A DNA stretch of 64,000 nucleotides from Iphione sp. A-MEVVRFRX5. Taxonomy: Eukaryota. Under the pieces are notes generated by a model, which was not told where the DNA came from, did not search any database, and saw only the letters and a program-made list of their open reading frames with translations. A program made the position numbers and the translations under genes. Of the stretch, positions 16 to 52,310 are shown one piece after another. The stretch's first letter is position 1, and every line of letters starts with the position of its first letter. The stretch lies in contig OZ320321.1 in the NCBI GenBank assembly GCA_976226885.1, forward strand, positions 12,338,001 through 12,402,000, written 5' to 3'.

Positions 16-1494
16 CTATTCGCTGTTCCCGGACGGTGGCGTTTGTGCGTTTCCCTTCCGATCCGTTTTAGTGGTGTCCTTTAGTTTAGGGCAATCTTGC
101 TTAAAATGGTCTTCAGAGAAACAATTCCAGCAAACAAACTTTCCCTGAGCATTTCGCCCAGTACTCTTCACTTTACTTTTCTCTCGTCGCGGATTCAACT
201 TTGGCGGAACCATTGGCTTAGCTGGTTTTGGGGCCACCGTTGCGACGGGCTTCTGTATTTCTTCCTTCAACTTCTGTATCTGTTCTTTCAGACTGTCTTC
301 TGTAACAATGGTGCGGATTTTCTTCTTTTTAGCGTACATTTCTTCCATTTCAACCACACGGATTGCTTCTTCTAAGGTTTTAACGTCAGCACGCATACAC
401 TTCAATTCAAGTTTATCCCCCAGTGCTCGCTGAAAGAATGCCACAGAAAAAGAATCTCTGGTTTCACGGTCAACTGCAGGATAGGCCCTCCTCATTAACC
501 TACGGACTGTATCTGCAAGTTCCTTAGGCAGCTGGTCCTTTTCCCTTCTTAGAGTAGTCAATTCCTGAACTGCACGGACTTTCTCTCTCCCTCGTCCGAA
601 ACGGTCCTGGAGCGCTGCTACTCTCTTCTGGTACGTAGATGTCTCTGCCGAGGTCAAGTCGCCGTAGAAAGAACGGGCCGAACCTGTTAGGGACAGTGCT
701 AACATGCTCTTCTTCGTCGGGAGATCCCAATCGCTCACCCGAGCCCATTCTTCGAATTGTGAGTGCCATCCCTCCCAGTCTGCTTTGCCATCGTATCGTT
801 CCGGTTTGAGCAGGGTAATACGTGAGGGTCGTTTCGCTACAGCGGTCGTTACAGGCTTCGGTGATGATGAGACGCTCTTCTCTATCTTGCGACGCAATTT
901 CCGTCTGAGTTCCGACTTCCTGGCTTCGTCCGTCAGGGATTCGCTGCCAGATTCTTCCTCGGTCTCGCCGGAATTCTGCAAATCGTCTTCTTGCTTGATG
1001 CGACGGTTCCTCAGCCGATACTTGCTCCTGTGCTGAACAATGATAGGAGGAGTTCCTGGAAGACGCGGATCTATCCGAGGAGTCCGGTCGCTCTGACTCC
1101 CAACACTGGCATCGTCTCCATCCTCGTGTACAGGGGGGTCCTCTCCATCCTCGTGTACTGAATCCGGCGGCTGCCCATGCCCAGGGACAGGGTCGACATC
1201 CTCGTCTATTACCTCTATCACATCCTCGTCCTCGTCCTCGTCCTCGGACGGCTGGTCGTTCTCCACGTTCACGTCTATCGGTATCGGTTGAGGTTGTGGC
1301 CCTATCGGTATAGGCTGGTCGTTCTGCTGGTTGTTCTGCGGATTCTGGATAGGTTCGAACTGCGGGTCGAGTTCCGGTGGTAGATTCTGGTCGGGACCCT
1401 GAGGCGGCTGATCCTGGTTCCCATTCTGGTTCTGGGGAACTCCCTGGTCCTGGTCCTGGTCCGGGAGGATCCCGTTCGCTCCGTTGGCTGCCAT
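16..1494 (-). CDS. gag: Ty3/gypsy-type retrotransposon Gag (capsid-like region plus C-terminal CCHC zinc knuckle)
   Basis: Uninterrupted ORF with first ATG at 1494-1492 (the track starts one codon earlier at a GTG). Contains the gypsy-gag-like segment KPERYDGKADWEGWHSQFEEWARVSDW...KKSMLALSLTGSARSFY and a CX2CX4HX4C knuckle (CWNCFSEDHFKQDC). It lies just downstream of a PBS and LTR. Confidence 0.92.
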   Translation of the reverse strand: MAANGANGILPDQDQDQGVPQNQNGNQDQPPQGPDQNLPPELDPQFEPIQNPQNNQQNDQPIPIGPQPQPIPIDVNVENDQPSEDEDEDEDVIEVIDEDVDPVPGHGQPPDSVHEDGEDPPVHEDGDDASVGSQSDRTPRIDPRLPGTPPIIVQHRSKYRLRNRRIKQEDDLQNSGETEEESGSESLTDEARKSELRRKLRRKIEKSVSSSPKPVTTAVAKRPSRITLLKPERYDGKADWEGWHSQFEEWARVSDWDLPTKKSMLALSLTGSARSFYGDLTSAETSTYQKRVAALQDRFGRGREKVRAVQELTTLRREKDQLPKELADTVRRLMRRAYPAVDRETRDSFSVAFFQRALGDKLELKCMRADVKTLEEAIRVVEMEEMYAKKKKIRTIVTEDSLKEQIQKLKEEIQKPVATVAPKPAKPMVPPKLNPRREKSKVKSTGRNAQGKFVCWNCFSEDHFKQDCPKLKDTTKTDRKGNAQTPPSGNSE

Positions 1495-1562
1495 CACTCA
1501 TCTAGGCGTAGCTTCGTTTTTCTGTTATCAGGAATTCGAAAAGTATTTCTGTTTCTCTTCTT

Positions 1563-2870: not shown

Positions 2871-4379
2871 CTGTGGTCAGACAGATGCGCAGCCACTGTC
2901 AGCAGTGTTCTGTCAGCAGGGTTCTTCACGTGACCAAGCCCCACTAGGTGGAGCTGCCTTCTGGAAAGTATAATCAATGTATTTGATGTATTCCGATTAT
3001 GTATCAGTGCTTATCCTATCTAAGACTGTATACTCACCATATATGTGTTAGCACTGAGTTAAGTAGTTGTCTTGAATCCAGGGTTTTGTTGTAGTAAACA
3101 TATGTATTCATGAAGAAGCTTTTTGGTAGTAGTAATATTATTATTGCTGACAAAGACATTAAATGGATATGCAGATGATGGACACGGTAATAGAAACCTT
3201 GAAACCTTGAAATGTGAAATTTCTATCGTCTGCGAATTTGCATCATAATGCAAATAAGGACTAAAACCTGACCAGTTATTAATCTAGATACGTCAACTTA
3301 ACATCATGAGTATTAGTATTACTCGTAACTAAGTATGATATACTGTCAATCCCTGCTCTTGTGTCATTGCAGTCATCGGTGGGAATAAAAATCTGAACCA
3401 TTGTACCATTATATAGTATGGATCATATTTAAAAATAAAAACGTTCTGAAATCTCTCAGATCTCTCAAATCTCAAATATCGGTGTGCATATATCATTTTA
3501 TGTACATGTACATAACTACAGCACCTGGCGAACCTAAACATCTATTCGCCACTATTATATGTCATAGACTGCCCCCCCCCCCCCCATTAGCGGTCCGTGA
3601 GCTGAGTGGTCCCCCGCTCAAGCAGGGACTCATTTCTCCCCTTTCCGATGCTTGCCTTCACAAACAAGCAAGAGTTTTTATCAGAGGAGGAAGCCGAGAA
3701 GCCACACTAAGCACGTGATCAAGCGAAAGTTGCCTCTCGATGAGGCCCCATTTCCTCCCACTTGGCGCGCGCCGGGCGGCCGGTCCCGCTGGTGCCTGAT
3801 GCGATTAGTGACGGGAATAATTTCATTTACGCGCCAATCAATGATGCTCACACATAAGCCTCCCGCTTCAGTTTGGCTAATCCTTTCTGCACAGGTGTCA
3901 TGGAGCTAATGCAACCTGGCTGCCAACGCTCTAATTCACCGGATCCCACATTCCTCTCTTGTTTTTTGTTTTTGTTGGTTTTTCGTCTACCAGGCCGCGC
4001 GCATCGTGGCTTTGGGCGTGTCTAGCTGTTCTGTCTCCTCCCCGGGATGTGGAATACTGTGTCTCCCCGGTGAATTCCATGAAAATTGGTTCTGATGTTT
4101 AAACGTCGGTCTTTTGGTAATAAACTACAATACCCATTAAGCTTTTTTTTCATCAGAAAGGAAAAAGATAACGTGGGTCTGAAAGCTACACAGACAAGTA
4201 GGCCTACTGTACTCTTATCGGTATGGATATACTGCGTATGTATACATATATATATAGAGAGAGATAATGGGTCTGTATATAAAACATAGACATGTGCGTT
4301 AGATATAGAAGAGCGCGGACAGCCGGGTACTTGGTGTTCACTCAGGCGGAGCCACTGAAAACAGAGGTGTCAAATAGTG

Positions 4380-5845
4380 CTACCACACCTATACAGAGAG
4401 AGANNNNNNNNNNNNNNNNNNNNNNNNNNNNNNNNNNNNNNNNNNNNNNNNNNNNNNNNNNNNNNNNNNNNNNNNNNNNNNNNNNNNNNNNNNNNNNNNN
4501 NNNNNNNNNNNNNNNNNNNNNNNNNNNNNNNNNNNNNNNNNNNNNNNNNNNNNNGAGAGACAGGGATAAGGACAAGGACAGAGACAGTGCTACTACATCT
4601 ATACAGAGACACAGAGAGACACACACATACACATAAACACCTATACATTTGTATGCATACACCCAAACACATATACCTGTACACATCCATACACATATCT
4701 ATGTATGATCGGTTCCAGTGAAAATAAAGTTCTTAACAAATACACATGTGAATTCACACAAACACCAAGACACACCTACACACATCCATACACACACCTA
4801 TACACACATCCATACACACATCTATACACTCAACTAAATACATGTCTACAGATGCATACACCTACACACTTTAATACACACTTCTAAACACACAAGTACA
4901 TAGATGTCTATAGACACATATACAGCTACACACATCCATACACATCTACACACTCAGCTACATTTATGTGTACAGGTGCATAAACCTACACACATGCATA
5001 CACACATCTATACACACAACTACACACATATCTATAGACACATATATCTACACACATCTAGACACACAACTACACACATATCTATGGAAAAATACACCTA
5101 CACTCACCAATACACACACCTATACACACAACTACACACATATCTATAGGTAAATACACATACACATGCCAATACACACATCTATACATACAACTACACT
5201 CATATCTATGGACAAATGCACCTACACACATCCATACACACATCCATACACACAACTACACACATATCTATAGGTAAATACACATACACATGCCAATACA
5301 CACATCTATACACACAACTACACACATATCTGTGGACAAATACACCTACACTCACCAATACACACATCTATACACACAACTACACACATATCTATAGGCA
5401 AATACACATACACATGCCAATGCACACATCCATACACATCTACACACTCAGCTTCATTTATGTGTTCAGGTGCATAAACCTACACACATGCATACACACA
5501 TCTATACACACAACTACACACATATCTATAGACACAGCTACACACATCTAGACACACAACTACACACATATCTATAGACACATATATCTACACACATCTA
5601 GACACACAACTACACACATATCAATGGAAAAATACACCTACACCCACCAATACACACATCTATACACACAACTACACACATATCTATAGGCAAATACACA
5701 TACACATGCCAATACACACATCTATACATACAACTACACTCGTATCTATGGACAAATGCACCTACACCCATCCATACACACATCTATACACACAACTCTA
5801 CACACATCTGTAAATATGTATGTGTAGTTGTAGGTATGGCTGTGT
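4380..5845. repeat. GA tract, N-gap (4404-4554) and long CA-rich compound satellite (ACACACATCTATACACACAACT-type)
   Basis: Visible directly; accounts for the H/T/Y-rich ORFs in the track. Confidence 0.9.
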
Positions 5846-6351: not shown

Positions 6352-8358
6352 TATATATCTACATCTAATGCCAAATAGCACAGAGCATTCCATAGGTTCT
6401 AGGCATTGACATATTTTAGTAACTAGGTGTAGAGAATGCCAACCTCTAACCAGACTACATGTATTTGTTTTTCATCTGTGTAAAGTTGGAAAAGACAGAA
6501 AGGAATTTGAATCAGGACAGGAAATGAAAGGACAATGAATTAGAGGACAGAAAATTAGAAGACAGCGAATTAGAGGACAATGAACAAGGGTTATAAGACC
6601 CACAAGAGTGTGATGGAAGGCCAGACAGTCAGCCAGCAGTATTCCTGAGGTGTCCCCCTCTCTATGAGGTGGGGGATAATTAGAGAAGTGGGTGAATCTT
6701 ACACTCCACACCACACTACATTCTCACACTACACATTCAGAATGTTTACCTGGATAAGACGACTCCTTTTTCTAACGTGCCTCATCCATTCTTCGTCCAT
6801 TCATCTACCCTTCTCTGTTTCTATCGGTTTCTACCTTGTGCCGAGACTTAAATGCACAAGAAGACGCATTCGTCTTTCCTGCATTTAACGGCGCATTTCT
6901 GCTCTGATGAGAAGGACACGAGTACAATTTCCAGTTATGTTCTCTGTATTCTTTCTCTGAACATCGATCTATTCTGAAAATGAAAGTGTTTAATTGACCC
7001 TTGAAAAGGCTTTGTCAGTGTGTCGTGCTGGTAGGTTTGTTAGCAGTATGAAACGGCGACAGGAAGGAGAGAAGCGAATGAATGCATATAGAGACAAACA
7101 TCAATGGAGGTCCCTCGTATGCGCCTGTTTATCATCTGCCCTTGAAAAAAGAAGCTCTATTTATGTGTAGCCACCCCCGCCTGCCGGCCTTCTACATCTC
7201 TCTGTATACCTTCATCCATCAATCACTATTTCCTCTTCTCATTGTTTTACTGTAGGATCATTCACTTCACTTACGATGCCAACATCTTCATATGTCCATC
7301 AATAGGGCATACAAAAAGATATCAAGGTGTCTCCAAGGTAACATGGTGAAAAATGATAGGATCGGAAGGTAGGTGGTATTTTTTTTTATTTTTCCTTTGT
7401 TTCTATGTTGAGTCATACGGAGAGAAACAAATGTCGATGGCAATATGATTTCTGCGGCTTGGATTTTTATAAAAGACTGCATCATTTGAAGGCTGATGAT
7501 GTAAGGAACATACTTATCTATTGAATATGTCTCTCGCATTATTACTTCCAAAGATACTCACAAAACAATAAATAAGTTACAACTGGTCACAATGTAGGGT
7601 CGGTCGGGTTACCGAAAAGACAGATCATTTTTGACAAGGGTTAGTCCATATGATGATCACTATAGGAAACAGCAGGGCAAGCAATTGGAAGAGGAGGTAT
7701 TTTACCAAGACCTTAATAAAGGTTCGATAGGTTGATTCGTTATGACAATCAATAGATCCAGTCAAATACTGTATTGTCTTTGCGAACTTAAGGTTTCTAT
7801 ACTTCTCAAAGTTTTTTGTCTGAAATTGTAGCAAACATGGCGGAGTGGGTTAACGGTTCCGTCAGCAATAATGTTGAGTTTTGTTTGAAAATAGAAGAAA
7901 TCATGACTTTATTCTTCTTTCGGTACTTTGTGAGTAACGTATGGTATGAGCTTGTGGTGCTCGAAGTTGCCCATAGCATGGATCAGTAATGGTGTTGAGC
8001 CAGTTATAATACAACTCGTACTGCTCCCATCTTTGCAGGGTGCCTTATTAACCAGCTACGAAAAAATAAACAAATTTCTGAAAACGGGGAGAGTCTTACA
8101 CGTCCAGTTTCAAGAATCTTGGTAGAGATGTTGCCCTGTGCTCGTGAAATGGTCCAAGCTTATACACCGACACCAAGTTAAGTAATGATCATACACTCCA
8201 TGTATTCACGCACCAGGCTAGGTTCACATCTCCAACACACCTTCATTCCTCACTCTCCGGCTATTGGATAAATCATCTGGAACACCAATTTCTGGTTGAT
8301 TCTTCATATTTACCCTTATTCCAGCCATGTGCTGGGACACAGTGAGGTAACCGACCTG

Positions 8359-9644: not shown

Positions 9645-10200
9645 TTTTAACATTAATTTGAACTTAATTTGCTTCTGACCACCATTGTATATTGTTAATG
9701 TCCACTTGCATATTGTTCAGGTCATCAGCTTTAGCTCTTCCATTGCTTTTAATTATAAGATCACCTCCATAATTATCCTCGTCAACTTACAGACCTTATA
9801 AATGTTATTAGCAAATATTAAAACCAACAGAGGGCCTAATAGAGACCCCTGAGGCACTCCATATGTACCTTCCGAAATTATGTTATTTGCTTTTGTCCTT
9901 TGACTACAATCTGACAAATAATTCACGAACCAATTTATGCTTCTTCCAATTCCCATTTCTGTCAGTCTACGTATTACAAACTTATTATAACCTTAATAGT
10001 TTAAAGGCTCTCCTATAATCGAAATAGGTAGCCAGAACAACCTTATCTTTATTCAAATGTTCATGTATATGCTCTTTCTATCTTTACGATATAATTAACT
10101 CCTGTCAACAGTTACTTTGTTCATCCCTTCCTTATCCATCCACGTACTTTGCTTTAGTATAACTCTCGCCTTCTTCACAGAGCATAATTCCACAAAGATT
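9645..10200 (-). pseudogene. Decayed non-LTR (CR1/L2-group) reverse transcriptase fragment
   Basis: Conceptual translation gives HLNKDKVVLATYFDYRRAF, WFVNYLSDCSQRTK and YGVPQGSLLGPLL, then DINNIQW, matching LINE RT motifs (DxxKAFD, GVPQGSxLGP). Frameshifts and stops are present. Confidence 0.8.
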
Positions 10201-43559: not shown

Positions 43560-44784
43560 GATTAAATCCTTCTACTGAAATGCACTTCTCAACTGAATTT
43601 GGTGGTGGTGGCGGTGGGGGCGGCGGCGGCGGCTCCAATCGATCGATACGACACAGATCGTCGGCCCTCAAGAGTGGCCAGCTTCATTCCCCGCTTCCCG
43701 GCCGTGCAGGGCGGCCTGGCTGGCAGGGTCGAGGTGTAGGTGCTCAGTTAATACCGAGCCCCTGCCAAGCCCCTGCAGCAGACCGGCAAGGGGGAGGGGG
43801 GGTCCTACTGGCGTGGAGTAGGGGCTACTCAGGACAGACAGATTAACAGGAAACGTCGGAAAACTAGCACCAAAGGTCTAAAAGACGAAGTAAGGGGAAA
43901 ATGCGCTGCAGTGCATATCTTCAAAGTATGATTCCGTGATGGAAATGATGTCCTCATTATGGTTGTCCGGGTTTACCTCCGGAAATTGATATTCCTGAAG
44001 ACGGTGGGAAATCTTACCCTTTTTTGGTGGTGGGCAGTGAATGATAGCCTAATCGTTGGAAATACAGTATTGTAACTAAAAATAGGAAATATTCACTCAA
44101 ATGTTGAGTATTCGGCTCGAGCCAGCCGTCCAATAGTCTCAGAGCTGGATTTCCCAGCCGTTGAGGCCCCCAGCAGCTGCTGGCACTCACTATGGACGCT
44201 TGGCCGGCGTCTCTTTATCCAGAACAGCCAGCAGCGACGCATGGCGTGATGTGAGAGAACGAGTCGTTGAAGGAGTGGCTCGCCGGGCCAGGACGTCAGT
44301 TGCCAGAGTGTGGTTGTTTACACGTGCAGCGCCAGACTGTCGCCGTCCTCGCCCGGTACTTCACGGGGGAGACAACCCCCCGCCGTGTCCTCCTCCTACT
44401 CCTCCTCCTCACAGAGGCGAGCCATCTCCTACTCCTCAGACTAGCCATTCACTCACAACGATCTGCTCCACGCGTGGACTCGAGTTGCTCTCTCGGCGTG
44501 TAGTAACCCGCCTCGTTGACTGAGATCCCCCCCCCTTCGCCCCGCAGGCCGAGAGACAGGTAGTTGAAGGCTCAAGCCGAGGCGAGCGGTTGCTAGCAGG
44601 GCGCCCGGACATGGAGGAGCCGGACTGAGCCGTCCTGGTGCCGCCCTCGCCCAGCGACGGAGGCGGTACCTGTCTGAGACCATCCCGGTACCCAGTCCCC
44701 CTGCAGGACAGACTGAGGCCCCCGGTCAGCAGAGCAACCTTCCAAGCACAGATTCAGCTGCCCACACGGAACTGTAAGGTAATA
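43560..44784 (+). promoter_or_regulatory. CpG/GC-rich island, probable promoter and 5' exon of the downstream claudin-like gene; donor AAG|GTAATA at 44778/44779
   Basis: Strong local GC/CpG rise, a splice donor at its right edge, and position 6 kb upstream of the GC-rich coding exon on the same strand. The linkage is inferred. Confidence 0.45.
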
Positions 44785-50337: not shown

Positions 50338-50822
50338 CCTCAGTGGGCTGCAGGGAGACCCACATAGAGAATTCCAGTGGACCTCAGTGGGATGTGGGGA
50401 GACCCACATAGAGACATCTAACGAGACTCAGTGGGCTGCAGGGAGACCCACATAGAGACATCCAGTGGACCTCAGTGGGCTGCAGGGAGACCCACGTAGA
50501 GACATCCAGTGGACCTCAGTGGGCTGCAGGGAGACCCACGTAGAGACATCCAGTGGACCTCAGTGGGCTGCAGGGAGACCCACGTAGAGACATCCAGTGG
50601 ACCTCAGTGGGCTGCAGGGAGACCCACGTAGAGACATCCAGTGGACCTCAGTGGGCTGCAGGGAGACCCACGTAGAGACATCCAGTGGACCTCAGTGAGT
50701 GCAGGGAGACCCACGTAGAGACATCCAGTGGACCTCAGTGGGTGCAGGGAGACCCACATAGAGACATCCAGTGGACCTCAGTGAGTGCAGGGAGACCCAC
50801 ATAGAGACAGTGGGCTGCAGGG
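50338..50822. repeat. 44-bp minisatellite, about 11 copies
   Basis: Unit CAGTGGGCTGCAGGGAGACCCACGTAGAGACATCCAGTGGACCT; period measured from 50473 and 50517. Confidence 0.95.
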
Positions 50823-50935
50823 GTCCATACACACCTCTGAGTATTACCTCGGCTCCCCCTATCGGCTGAGCTGCTCACTATTGATCCTCGAGCGACTCCT
50901 CCTCCTCCTCCTCCTTCCTGCTGCTCCCACCGCAG

Positions 50936-51786
50936 CGCCCCCTCCGGCCGCCCTCTTGCGGCGACCTCTCGCGGCTTCCTGCTGGATTCCCGAAGGGACC
51001 TGGCTTCGCCCTCCTCCTCCGCCGCCAGCCTCCGCAGTGCCTCGTGCGCCGCGCTGACCAGCGACGTCGCTTCCGCCGCCACTTCCGAACGACGCAACTC
51101 TCGCGAGAGGCTGACGACGACGTCGGGTGGCGAGAAGCAGAAGAAGCGGCGCCCGAACATCCGCCTCACCACGTCGCACTCGTCGCAGCACAACCACCAC
51201 CACCGCCAGCAACAGCAGCAACAACAGCAACAGCAACAGCAACGACATCAGCACCAAAATGGCGACATCTTCGGTGGGCGGCGGAGCGACCACCGGAAGG
51301 ACATCTCCGCACAAGATAACGGGTCGGTGCCGACCTCTGGCGGCGGCGGGGGCGGCGAGAAGAAGAGCGGCGAGAAGCGGAGCAAGAGCCAGCAGCAGCA
51401 GCGGGTGTCGGCGGGCAGCCTGCTGCTCAAGGTCTACTACCTGTGCTCGCTCGTGGGCAGTGTAATAGCCGTGGTATTCATGGTGGTCGGCTTCTCCACC
51501 CCGCACTGGGAGCACATCGACTACGACACGGACAAGGTGCGCTTGGCCGCCGCCGCCGACCCCAACGTGTCCGTCTTCTTCCCCACCGACGGCGCGGGCG
51601 CCGGCGCCGACGGCTACTTCACCGTCACCAACTTAGCCGCCATGGCCGCCGCCGCCGCCGCCAGCTCGGCATCGACGACGGGTTCCGCCGGAAGTACGGC
51701 CGTCAATGGGTCGTCTATCCCCGCTATCTTACACATTCCGCTGAGGAAGTATGGCGGACTGTGGTCAACGTGTGATACTCTCCCAG
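50936..51786 (+). CDS. Coding exon of a claudin/PMP22-superfamily tetraspan protein: long low-complexity N-terminus, TM1 and first extracellular loop
   Basis: The frame is open from 50841, with GC3-rich codons and a CAG/CAA polyQ. It encodes a hydrophobic helix LLLKVYYLCSLVGSVIAVVFMVVGFSTPHW and the signature YGGLWSTC (W...GLW..C), ending at a phase-1 donor CCAG|GTAAG at 51786. The start is placed at a putative acceptor (CCCACCGCAG|); the true start is unresolved. Confidence 0.8.
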
Positions 51787-51819
51787 GTAAGCAGCATATC
51801 CTCCTCTCCCATGCATATT

Positions 51820-52310
51820 CACGTTACCCCTCATATACTCACGTTATACCCCTCATATTCATCTTATACCCCTCATATTCATCTTATACCCCTCATATAC
51901 ATGTTATACCCCTCATATGCATGGTATCTCTTATATTCACATAACTGCCCATATTCATGTTATACCCCTTATATTCATGTTATACCTCATATACCTCATA
52001 TACACGTTATACCCTTTTATATACATGTTATACCTTTCATATTCATGTTATACCCTCACATACATGTTATACCCCTCATATTCATTTTATACCTGTTATA
52101 AACATGGTATACCCCTCATATTCATGTTATCTCTTATATTTACATAACTGCCCATATTCAAGTTTTATCCCTTATGTTCATCTTAGAACCCTCATACACA
52201 TGTTATACCCTTCATATAAATGTTATACCCCCTGTTTTCATTGTCATCTCTAATATTCATTCTATACCCCTCATATACCCATTACACTCCTCATATTCAC
52301 ATCATCCCTG
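51820..52310. repeat. AT-rich minisatellite, about 20 bp (TCATATTCATGTTATACCCC)
   Basis: Visible directly; intronic. Confidence 0.9.

What the first reader, a model, noticed from the sequence alone, without database searches (positions are those of the whole stretch)
50841..51482. Claudin-like gene: 213 codons of apparently coding frame with no AUG, plus a strong out-of-frame AUG
Seen: the frame is open from 50841, and the first in-frame AUG (51480) lies inside TM1, too late to be the start. The upstream part looks coding (GC3 bias, CAG/CAA polyQ varying only at third positions, HHH, KQKKRR). An in-frame CUG at 51000 has optimal context (GAC-CUG-G). A strong AUG (AAA-AUG-G, 51259) opens a 68-aa overlapping ORF in another frame, ending at 51465. 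No upstream exon with an in-frame AUG in the phase needed for the 50935 acceptor was found in the 44.6-44.8 kb or 50.2-50.7 kb candidates. Established: claudin/PMP22 proteins usually have very short N-termini. Inference: non-AUG initiation giving a long polyQ cytoplasmic N-terminus with a nested alternative ORF; otherwise an unseen start exon or an indel error.
Basis: partly seen in the sequence, partly recalled or inferred. Interest (0 to 1): 0.7.

Follow-up and report, generated by a model that had tools for sequence, protein, structure and literature searches.

The report
Claudin-like coding exon without AUG
This is a real coding exon of a four-pass, claudin-like membrane protein with a long disordered N-terminal tail; it has no start codon of its own, most likely because the AUG sits on an upstream exon not yet identified, and unusual non-AUG translation is neither shown nor needed.

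Summary
Frame f0 is open from 50841. Its only ATG before the donor is 51480, inside TM1. ATG 51259 is out of frame and opens a 68-codon ORF.

The stretch is exon A (50936-51786) of a claudin-superfamily tetraspan gene. I located two further exons 44-45 kb downstream, outside the window. They are phase-compatible, share the GC3 bias, and have homologues in a metagenome relative.

The N-terminal tail is coding in f0 across ATG 51259. GC3 is 0.8-0.9, the polyQ varies only CAG/CAA, and alignment with the closest relative (L009, 52% identity) scores best in f0. This rules out an indel.

ATG 51259 falls on conserved Asn-Gly codons (AAT-GG). The same ATG occurs in a relative that has an undisputed upstream AUG. 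The nested ORF is not conserved.

Two relatives (L009, L012) also lack an in-exon AUG. In L009 an AUG 59 nt upstream joins in frame through a 46-nt intron (2.3% of shuffles give such a model).

Exon A starts at a strong acceptor where GC3 jumps. The lack of ATGs is explained by base composition.

Best reading: an upstream exon supplies the AUG. One weak candidate is 44192-44250. Non-AUG initiation stays possible at about 13%.

The parts
50936..51786 (+). Exon A of the claudin-like gene. It encodes about 160 codons of low-complexity cytoplasmic N-terminal extension, then TM1 and extracellular loop 1. It ends on the first base of a Gly codon (phase 1).
   Evidence: The frame is open and GC3 is 0.80-0.91 throughout, against 0.45 just upstream. 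There are 10 homologues by HMMER, the best at 52% identity. A donor at the same G|GTAAG position is shared by all homologues.
50893..50935 (+). Pyrimidine tract plus CAG acceptor, the 3' end of the upstream intron. The exon starts at codon position 3, so the upstream exon must contribute 2 nt.
   Evidence: 80% pyrimidines in the 20 nt before AG 50934-50935. It is the last AG before the conserved block, and GC3 jumps at this point.
50974..51026 (+). Conserved block (..LLDS..L.S.SSSAA..) holding the in-frame CTGs at 50979, 50982 and 51000.
   Evidence: blastn against L009:9861-9913 gives 76% identity over 55 nt, E 0.02. The conservation is at nucleotide level in low-complexity sequence and cannot be assigned to one frame.
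51183..51257 (+). His-rich and polyQ tract (H N H H H R Q12 R H Q H Q).
   Evidence: The CAG/CAA units differ only at third positions. The tract is absent from L009.
51259..51465 (+). Out-of-frame ATG (frame +1) and its 68-codon ORF. I read it as a by-product of the Asn-Gly codons AAT-GGC, not as a gene.
   Evidence: The same AAT-GG occurs in L009, L012 and L010 copy 2. The f1/f1 alignment score is 33 against 54 for f0/f0.
51420..51497 (+). TM1 (LLLKVYYLCSLVGSVIAVVFMVVGFS). It contains the only in-frame ATG, at 51480.
   Evidence: Kyte-Doolittle maximum 2.42. The Pfam Claudin_2 match to profile positions 1-26 falls here.
51498..51786 (+). Extracellular loop 1, with W-E after TM1, two N-x-S/T sites and the GLW..C motif (51756-51773).
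   Evidence: W223, E224 and C311 are invariant or nearly so among 11 family members. N-x-S/T sites.
51787..51792 (+). Splice donor GTAAGC.
   Evidence: 11.1 bits on a generic donor matrix. The position is conserved in the homologues.
44192..44250 (+). Candidate start exon, unverified. ATG in context CTCACTATGGA, 19 codons plus 2 nt, donor GAT|GTGAGA at 44251. It joins 50936 in frame through junction codon ATC.
   Evidence: It is the only AUG-supplying option in the nearest upstream GC island. By chance, 6.5% of ATGs have such a donor and 0.8% also have this Kozak context. Against it: GC3 is only about 0.5.
44101..44760 (+). GC-rich island (63% GC), a possible promoter or first-exon region. Further donors lie at 44560, 44774 and 44779.
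   Evidence: It holds no convincing ORF on either strand.
50338..50809 (.). 44-bp minisatellite, 10.8 copies, in the intron directly upstream of exon A.

Best explanation
The stretch is the 5' part of an internal coding exon, exon A (50936-51786). The gene encodes a divergent four-transmembrane protein of the PMP22/claudin superfamily. Exon A encodes a cytoplasmic, low-complexity N-terminal extension of about 160 residues (Ser/Ala/Pro-rich, a basic patch, His/polyQ), followed by TM1 and extracellular loop 1 with the GLW..C motif. Two more exons complete the protein. Exon B is G000:C19:12433601-12433744 (L055:1601-1744) and holds TM2 and the start of TM3. Exon C is C19:12434628-12434881 (L055:2628-2881) and holds the rest of TM3, loop 2, TM4 and a tail ending ..YDQICSM. 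Translation runs in frame f0 through the whole exon. Inferred, not shown: the initiator AUG lies on an upstream exon that is cis-spliced to the strong acceptor at 50934-50935. One phase-compatible candidate is 44192-44250. The ATG at 51259 is then just an internal, out-of-frame triplet created by Asn-Gly codons, with no role.
For: Shown:
- f0 is coding from at least 51101. GC1/2/3 are 0.69/0.37/0.81 there, and GC3 is 0.80-0.91 from 50936 to 51786, against 0.45 in 50841-50934.
- Between ATG 51259 and TM1, the f0/f0 alignment with L009 scores 54, against 33 and 29 for the other frames. BLASTP window vs L009 gives E 2e-47, and the match begins upstream of the ATG.
- Exons B and C are phase 1 like exon A, with GC3 0.83-1.0. 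They have homologues in L010 with the same phases and the same C-terminus (E 2.5e-12 and 5e-21).
- L009 and L012 also lack an in-exon AUG. Their called 'M' is a GTG chosen by a prokaryotic gene caller.
- In L009, ATG 9793, donor AAG|GTATGC (8.2 bits) and AG 9850-9851 form a 46-nt intron that joins in frame. It is the only such model there, and only 2.3% of shuffles give one.
- In L012 the frame opens exactly at an acceptor.
- In L010, both copies have an AUG a few nt after an acceptor or stop.
- The acceptor at 50935 has a long pyrimidine tract.
- Zero ATGs in 50936-51258 is what the composition predicts (P=0.45).
- A phase-matched ATG exon exists at 44192-44250.
Against: - No transcript evidence is available, so the upstream exon is inferred.
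- The candidate 44192-44250 has GC3 of about 0.5, unlike the rest of the gene. 6.5% of random ATGs in the window have a phase-compatible donor.
- No conserved upstream coding exon was found between the window and L009.
- The window has no local ATG-plus-mini-intron solution like L009's. No ATG occurs at all between 50393 and 51258.
- The predicted intron phases differ: 2 here, 1 in L009, 0 in L012.
- The CUG-bearing block is one of the two best DNA-level matches to L009.
Confidence: 0.68

Rival explanations
1. Non-AUG initiation. The upstream exon or exons are untranslated, or exon A is itself the first exon. Ribosomes then start at a near-cognate codon in exon A (CUG 50982, CUG 51000, or another upstream of 51100) and make the long N-terminal extension without any AUG.
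For: No in-frame AUG lies in 213 codons although f0 is coding. CTG 50982 and CTG 51000 are both kept as CTG in L009 (9869, 9887), inside the best-conserved DNA block of the extension. The local ATG that L009 appears to use has no counterpart here. The GC island at 44.1-44.8 kb looks non-coding. Conserved non-AUG N-terminal extensions are a known class (PMC3105428).
Against: Genes that start only at a non-AUG codon are very rare (own knowledge). The strong acceptor and the GC3 jump at 50936 suggest that coding begins at the exon edge. CUG 50982 has C at -3 in both species, and CUG 51000 loses its +4 G in L009. L012 has no CUG. No stable structure follows the CUGs: z = +0.95 and -0.22. There is no ATG depletion beyond composition. 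The closest relative has an AUG solution.
Confidence: 0.13
2. Gene in decay, or a 5'-truncated copy. The ancestral AUG-bearing mini-exon seen in L009 was lost in this lineage, and the locus no longer makes a full protein.
For: A pairwise alignment places L009's ATG-bearing piece against a gap in the window. No local AUG model exists. The genome holds no second copy that could compensate.
Against: The frame is intact over three exons spread across 46 kb, with strong and uniform codon bias and conserved motifs. No stop or frameshift is present.
Confidence: 0.08
3. Spliced-leader trans-splicing. The acceptor at 50935, or the phase-0 AG at 50869-50870, receives a spliced leader that carries the AUG, as in flatworms.
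For: Open frames begin at or near acceptors in the window, L009 and L012. A spliced leader donating the initiator AUG is documented in flatworms (PMC9851317, citing Cheng et al. 2006).
Against: Nothing shows that this organism trans-splices, and no SL RNA was sought or found. The strongest acceptor is in phase 2, which does not fit a leader ending in AUG. L009 and L010 are explained by ordinary AUGs.
Confidence: 0.04
4. Assembly indel. A missing base between 51259 and about 51420 would put ATG 51259 in frame and make it the true start.
For: ATG 51259 has a strong context (AAAATGG). A G5 run lies at about 51348-51352.
Against: f0 is the conserved and GC3-periodic frame on both sides of the ATG. 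The polyQ and basic patch upstream are coding in f0. L009, L012 and L010 copy 2 have the same out-of-frame AAT-GG ATG. Independent assemblies would not share one error.
Confidence: 0.02
5. Functional dual coding or programmed frameshift. The 68-codon ORF from ATG 51259 is translated as a product of its own, or ribosomes starting there shift into f0.
For: The AUG context is strong. L009 also has an overlapping ORF of about 60 codons.
Against: The ORF is 23 codons in L012. Its product is not conserved (f1/f1 score 33, as expected for a frame overlapping a conserved one). Open alternative frames are normal at 64% GC. AAT before GG avoids a CpG, which explains the ATG. This reading does not account for f0 coding upstream of 51259.
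Confidence: 0.02

Closest known systems
PMP22/EMP/MP20/claudin superfamily (Pfam Claudin_2 PF13903; nearest feature-space neighbours are GSG1-like, TMEM178 and LHFPL-type tetraspans)
   Same: Four hydrophobic segments are arranged as TM1, a long loop 1, TM2, a short turn, TM3, loop 2 and TM4. Loop 1 has a Trp just after TM1, the GLW..C motif, and a second Cys 14-15 residues later at the start of exon B. Sub-threshold Claudin_2 matches are collinear: profile positions 1-26 on exon A, and 136-187 on the L010 homologue of exon C. The nearest ESM Atlas clusters all belong to this clan.
   Different: No exon reaches Pfam's gathering score (16 and 14.5 bits against 29.1). There is no hit to any solved structure by sequence profile. 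Loop 1 is long, at about 95 residues. The cytoplasmic N-terminus is about 160 residues or more, where claudins have a handful. The C-terminus ..YDQICSM is not the claudin -YV motif. The family was seen only as unnamed single-exon fragments in metagenome assemblies.
Evolutionarily conserved non-AUG-initiated N-terminal extensions (Ivanov et al. 2011, PMC3105428)
   Same: An in-frame, coding-looking and partly conserved extension lies upstream of the first in-frame AUG. It contains near-cognate CUG codons that are kept in one relative.
   Different: In the described cases the non-AUG start and the downstream AUG lie on a defined mRNA whose 5' end is known. Here the 5' end is unknown, a strong acceptor precedes the extension, the downstream AUG (51480) is inside TM1 and cannot give a working protein, and the closest relative has a spliced AUG solution.
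[quoted passage not shown] 2006, as cited in PMC9851317)
   Same: An ORF that begins at an acceptor with no AUG of its own.
   Different: There is no evidence of trans-splicing in this genome. The phase of the best acceptor does not fit a leader ending in AUG.

Membership tests
PMP22/EMP/MP20/claudin superfamily | Four transmembrane helices with a large first extracellular loop | tested here: met
   Hydropathy was computed exon by exon. TM1 is in exon A, TM2 and the start of TM3 are in exon B, and the rest of TM3 plus TM4 are in exon C. The exon phases are compatible.
PMP22/EMP/MP20/claudin superfamily | Loop 1 signature W...GLW..C...C | tested here: met
   W223, G306-L-W308 and C311 lie in exon A and are conserved in the family. 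The next Cys is in ..SGNAC.. at the start of exon B.
PMP22/EMP/MP20/claudin superfamily | Pfam Claudin_2 or PMP22_Claudin match above the gathering score | tested here: not met
   16.0 bits on exon A and 14.5 bits on the L010 exon C homologue, against a cut-off of 29.1. Only single exons were scanned; the joined protein was deliberately not searched.
PMP22/EMP/MP20/claudin superfamily | Very short cytoplasmic N-terminus | tested here: not met
   This gene has about 160 residues or more before TM1. Seven family members do have 3-9 residues before TM1, with real ATGs where checked.
PMP22/EMP/MP20/claudin superfamily | Claudin fold (four-helix bundle with a beta-sheet formed by the loops) | not tested
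This needs the joined three-exon protein. The sequence profile found no PDB relative.
Non-AUG-initiated N-terminal extension | A coding, conserved in-frame region upstream of the first in-frame AUG | tested here: met
Non-AUG-initiated N-terminal extension | No AUG available on the mature mRNA upstream in frame (5' end known) | tested here: inconclusive
   A strong acceptor lies at 50935. A phase-compatible ATG exon candidate exists at 44192-44250 but is unverified and has atypical GC3. No transcript data are on hand.
Non-AUG-initiated N-terminal extension | Conserved near-cognate codon in a favourable context | tested here: inconclusive
   CTG 50982 and CTG 51000 are conserved in L009, but with C at -3 or without the +4 G. 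L012 has none. No downstream hairpin is present.
Non-AUG-initiated N-terminal extension | Initiating ribosomes or an N-terminal peptide at the non-AUG codon | not testable with these tools
   This requires initiation-site Ribo-seq or proteomics.

The most novel reading that the evidence does not exclude
A claudin-superfamily membrane protein whose only route to translation is initiation at a conserved CUG (50982 or 51000) inside a nucleotide-conserved block. This would yield a polyQ-bearing cytoplasmic N-terminus of about 150 residues. The strong out-of-frame AUG at 51259 would capture the ribosomes that scan past. The AUG-less state would have arisen in this lineage after loss of the small AUG-bearing exon that the closest relative still has.
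Probability: 0.12. Interest if true: 0.7.

Novelty: new member of a known kind. Interest (0 to 1): 0.3.

Why it matters
As it stands this is mainly an annotation matter. The result defines a three-exon core model for a divergent claudin-like tetraspan family that public protein collections hold only as unnamed fragments. It also shows that some lineages of the family carry a long disordered N-terminal tail. It warns that an open frame without AUG, even one conserved between species, is not evidence for non-AUG initiation when a splice acceptor precedes it. If transcripts were to show that no in-frame AUG reaches exon A, the gene would become one of very few animal genes with an obligate non-AUG start, and it would have a natural comparison in a relative that kept its AUG.

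Tried and rejected
- Three word-indexed protein searches gave nothing useful. Two were swamped by low-complexity words and returned either nothing or only two fragments already in hand; the third found only 13 candidates, none scoring.
- Both metagenome-contig scans (protein-pattern and DNA-pattern) found no orthologue; the DNA hits matched only the searched motif.
- Own-genome searches with PF13903, PF07803 and PF00822 did not find the downstream exons. A GC3-periodicity scan did.
- No paralogue or retrocopy of exon A exists in the genome.
- tblastn and blastn between the L009 flanks and 100 kb of window plus upstream found no conserved upstream exon. A G-rich hit at 43610-43635 proved to be chance.
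- ATG depletion as a 5'-UTR-like signal was rejected by shuffles.
- The shared 8-mer CTATTGAT upstream in both species is not significant; 29% of shuffles share an 8-mer.
- Frame-specific conservation in the LLDS block is uninformative, because polyPro in frame +1 scores highest.
- RNA folding downstream of the CUGs showed no structure.
- Rfam found nothing in the window.
- The PDB profile search found nothing.
- Cluster look-up gave no names.
- The organism could not be identified with the tools at hand.
- The only joins made were short in-script frame checks at junctions.

Full report
**Observation.**
- TGA at 50838-50840 closes frame f0 (codon starts at 50841+3k). The frame is then open to 51941.
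- Between 50700 and 51500 there are only two ATGs. 51259 (ACCAAAATGGC) is in frame +1, and its 68-codon ORF ends at 51465. 51480 is in f0, inside the hydrophobic ..VVFMVVGF...
- CTG 51000 has G at -3 and G at +4.
- A long pyrimidine tract ends in CAG at 50933-50935, and G|GTAAGC follows 51786.

**What the stretch is.** An exhaustive HMMER search with the TM1-loop 1 part (51399-51788) found ten true relatives.
- All are single-exon fragments from metagenome contigs.
- They share YY..S..FM..SF.TP.WE.I.YD.DK ... GLW..CDTL.G and then a donor at the same point.
- The best is P0001, on L009, a 60-kb ENA contig, at 52% identity.

A scan for open frames with this gene's extreme GC3 found two more exons, 44-45 kb downstream and outside the window.
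- Exon B is L055:1601-1744 (C19:12433601-12433744).
- Exon C is L055:2628-2881 (C19:12434628-12434881).
- Both have phase-1 boundaries that fit exon A's phase-1 donor.
- They supply TM2, TM3, loop 2, TM4 and a tail ending YDQICSM.
- L010, a metagenome contig with two tandem copies of the family, has homologues of exon B (53% identity, E 2.5e-12) and exon C (45%, E 5e-21). These show the same phases and the same C-terminus, which validates the model.

Evidence on family:
- Pfam Claudin_2 matches stay below threshold but are collinear: positions 1-26 on exon A, and 136-187 on L010's exon C homologue.
- The nearest ESM Atlas clusters are GSG-1/Claudin_2 for exon A (0.94 and 0.93) and TMEM178A/L_HMGIC_fpl/Claudin_2 for exon C (0.90).

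The gene is therefore a divergent tetraspan of the claudin superfamily. The joined protein was neither searched nor folded. Only short junction frame checks were made inside scripts.

**Is the N-terminal extension coding, and in which frame?**
- GC by codon position in f0 is 0.69/0.37/0.81 (51101-51258), 0.62/0.54/0.81 (51259-51340) and 0.63/0.43/0.91 (51341-51479). This is the same pattern as the TM1-loop part (0.56/0.59/0.83).
- GC3 is 0.80 from 50935 on, but 0.45 in 50841-50934.
- The polyQ differs only CAG/CAA.
- Between ATG 51259 and TM1, local alignment with L009 scores 54 in f0/f0, against 33 and 29 in the other frames. Shared residues are NGD, RK and DNG.V..SG, with synonymous differences.
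- A basic patch (KKRRP..RL..S.S) aligns with L009 and with L010 copy 2, where it lies downstream of an unambiguous AUG.

So f0 is translated from upstream of about 51100 and straight across ATG 51259. The indel idea fails for this reason, and also because independent assemblies show the same layout.

**The out-of-frame ATG.**
- It is made by AAT-GGC (Asn-Gly). The same residues are AAT-GG in L009, L012 and L010 copy 2.
- In the last of these, a real in-frame AUG lies 36 codons upstream, so the triplet is internal there.
- AAT before GG avoids a CpG. The window's other AAT codon is also followed by GGG.
- The overlapping ORF is 68 codons here, about 60 in L009 and 23 in L012, and its product is not conserved.

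Nothing supports a nested gene.

**Where is the start?** The AUG-less state is not unique to this genome.
- The 'M' of P0001 and P0010 is a GTG picked by a prokaryotic gene caller. The true frames (L009:9821 onward, L012:1195 onward) have no in-frame ATG before TM1.
- Seven members start with a real or called M 3-9 residues before TM1. Real ATGs were verified in L014, L072 and L073.
- L010 copy 1 and copy 2 have real ATGs 45 and 89 residues before TM1, shortly after a stop or an acceptor.
- In L012 the frame opens exactly at ..cttgtag|.
- In L009 one local model exists. A strong acceptor lies at 9783, followed by ATG 9793 and four codons. Donor AAG|GTATGC (8.2 bits) opens a 46-nt intron that ends at AG 9850-9851 and joins in frame eight residues before ..LLDS. 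Only 2.3% of shuffles give any such model.

The closest relative thus most likely uses an ordinary AUG brought in by splicing.

In the window no such local model exists. There is no ATG at all from 50393 to 51258.
- This absence is not a signal. Dinucleotide shuffles of 50936-51258 give 0.69 ATGs on average (P(0)=0.45), and codon shuffles give 0.51.
- The start must therefore come from farther upstream, or be non-AUG.
- The nearest upstream GC island (44101-44760) offers one AUG solution: ATG 44192 (A at -3, G at +4), 19 codons plus 2 nt, donor GAT|GTGAGA at 44251. This is phase 2, as the acceptor needs.
- It is weak. 6.5% of all ATGs in the window have such a donor (0.8% with that Kozak context too), and its GC3 of about 0.5 is unlike the gene's.
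- The other donors in the island (44560, 44774, 44779) give open frames without AUG.
- No conserved upstream exon was detected against L009.

**Non-AUG initiation.**

In favour:
- CTG 50982 and CTG 51000 are CTG in L009 too.
- They lie in a 55-nt block with 76% identity, one of the two best DNA matches between the loci.

Against:
- The block is low-complexity, (TCC)n(GCC)n, and cannot be assigned to a frame; frame +1 scores highest through polyPro.
- The contexts are mediocre, and L012 has no CUG.
- The 100 nt from 50976, spanning and following the CUGs, fold no better than shuffles: z +0.95 here and -0.22 in L009.
- Genes with an obligate non-AUG start are very rare (own knowledge; the class is described in PMC3105428).
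- A spliced leader donating the AUG is known in flatworms (PMC9851317), but nothing here points to trans-splicing.

**Verdict.** The most likely explanation, at about 0.68, is an as yet unidentified upstream AUG-bearing exon spliced to 50936. Non-AUG initiation stands at about 0.13, a decaying 5' end at about 0.08, trans-splicing at about 0.04, and the rest is marginal. The gene is a new, divergent member of a known superfamily, and interest is modest unless transcripts show that no AUG reaches exon A.

Noticed in passing
G000:C19:12447997-12448413 (L056:5997-6413), 46 kb beyond the window's end: First exon of a second, different claudin-like gene on the same strand. It has an ordinary ATG (AACAACATGTC), a short N-terminus, a TM1 and an SLGLW.FC motif. 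It has no Pfam hit on its own.
   Followed up: partly
window 16-1497 (-), and window coordinate 125411-126889 (+), outside the window: A 493-aa Gag-like ORF with a CCHC zinc knuckle (retrotransposon). A closely similar copy lies about 125 kb away on the other strand.
   Followed up: no
window 50338-50809: A 44-bp minisatellite, 10.8 copies at 94% match, directly upstream of exon A's acceptor region.
   Followed up: partly
window 51814-52299: A degenerate 20-bp tandem array (CATATTCATGTTATACCCCT, about 24 copies) that begins 27 nt into the intron after exon A.
   Followed up: no
L010:3942-7112 and L010:10001-11440: In one metagenome organism the family is tandemly duplicated. Both copies have an extra intron inside loop 1 and real in-exon ATGs. 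Copy 1 is complete on the contig (exons at about 3942-4200, 4510-4575, 6437-6577 and 6867-7115).
   Followed up: partly
window 43591-43860 and 44101-44760: Two GC-rich islands (63-64% GC) 6-7 kb upstream of exon A, with a (GGN)n run and no convincing ORF on either strand. They may be a promoter or 5'-UTR region.
   Followed up: partly
L009:9784-9795 and L010:9984-10003: In two relatives the exon that carries the AUG starts with similar bases right after the acceptor: GTCCTATTGATG and GTGCCTATTT..ATG. This may be a conserved exon start, or chance.
   Followed up: no
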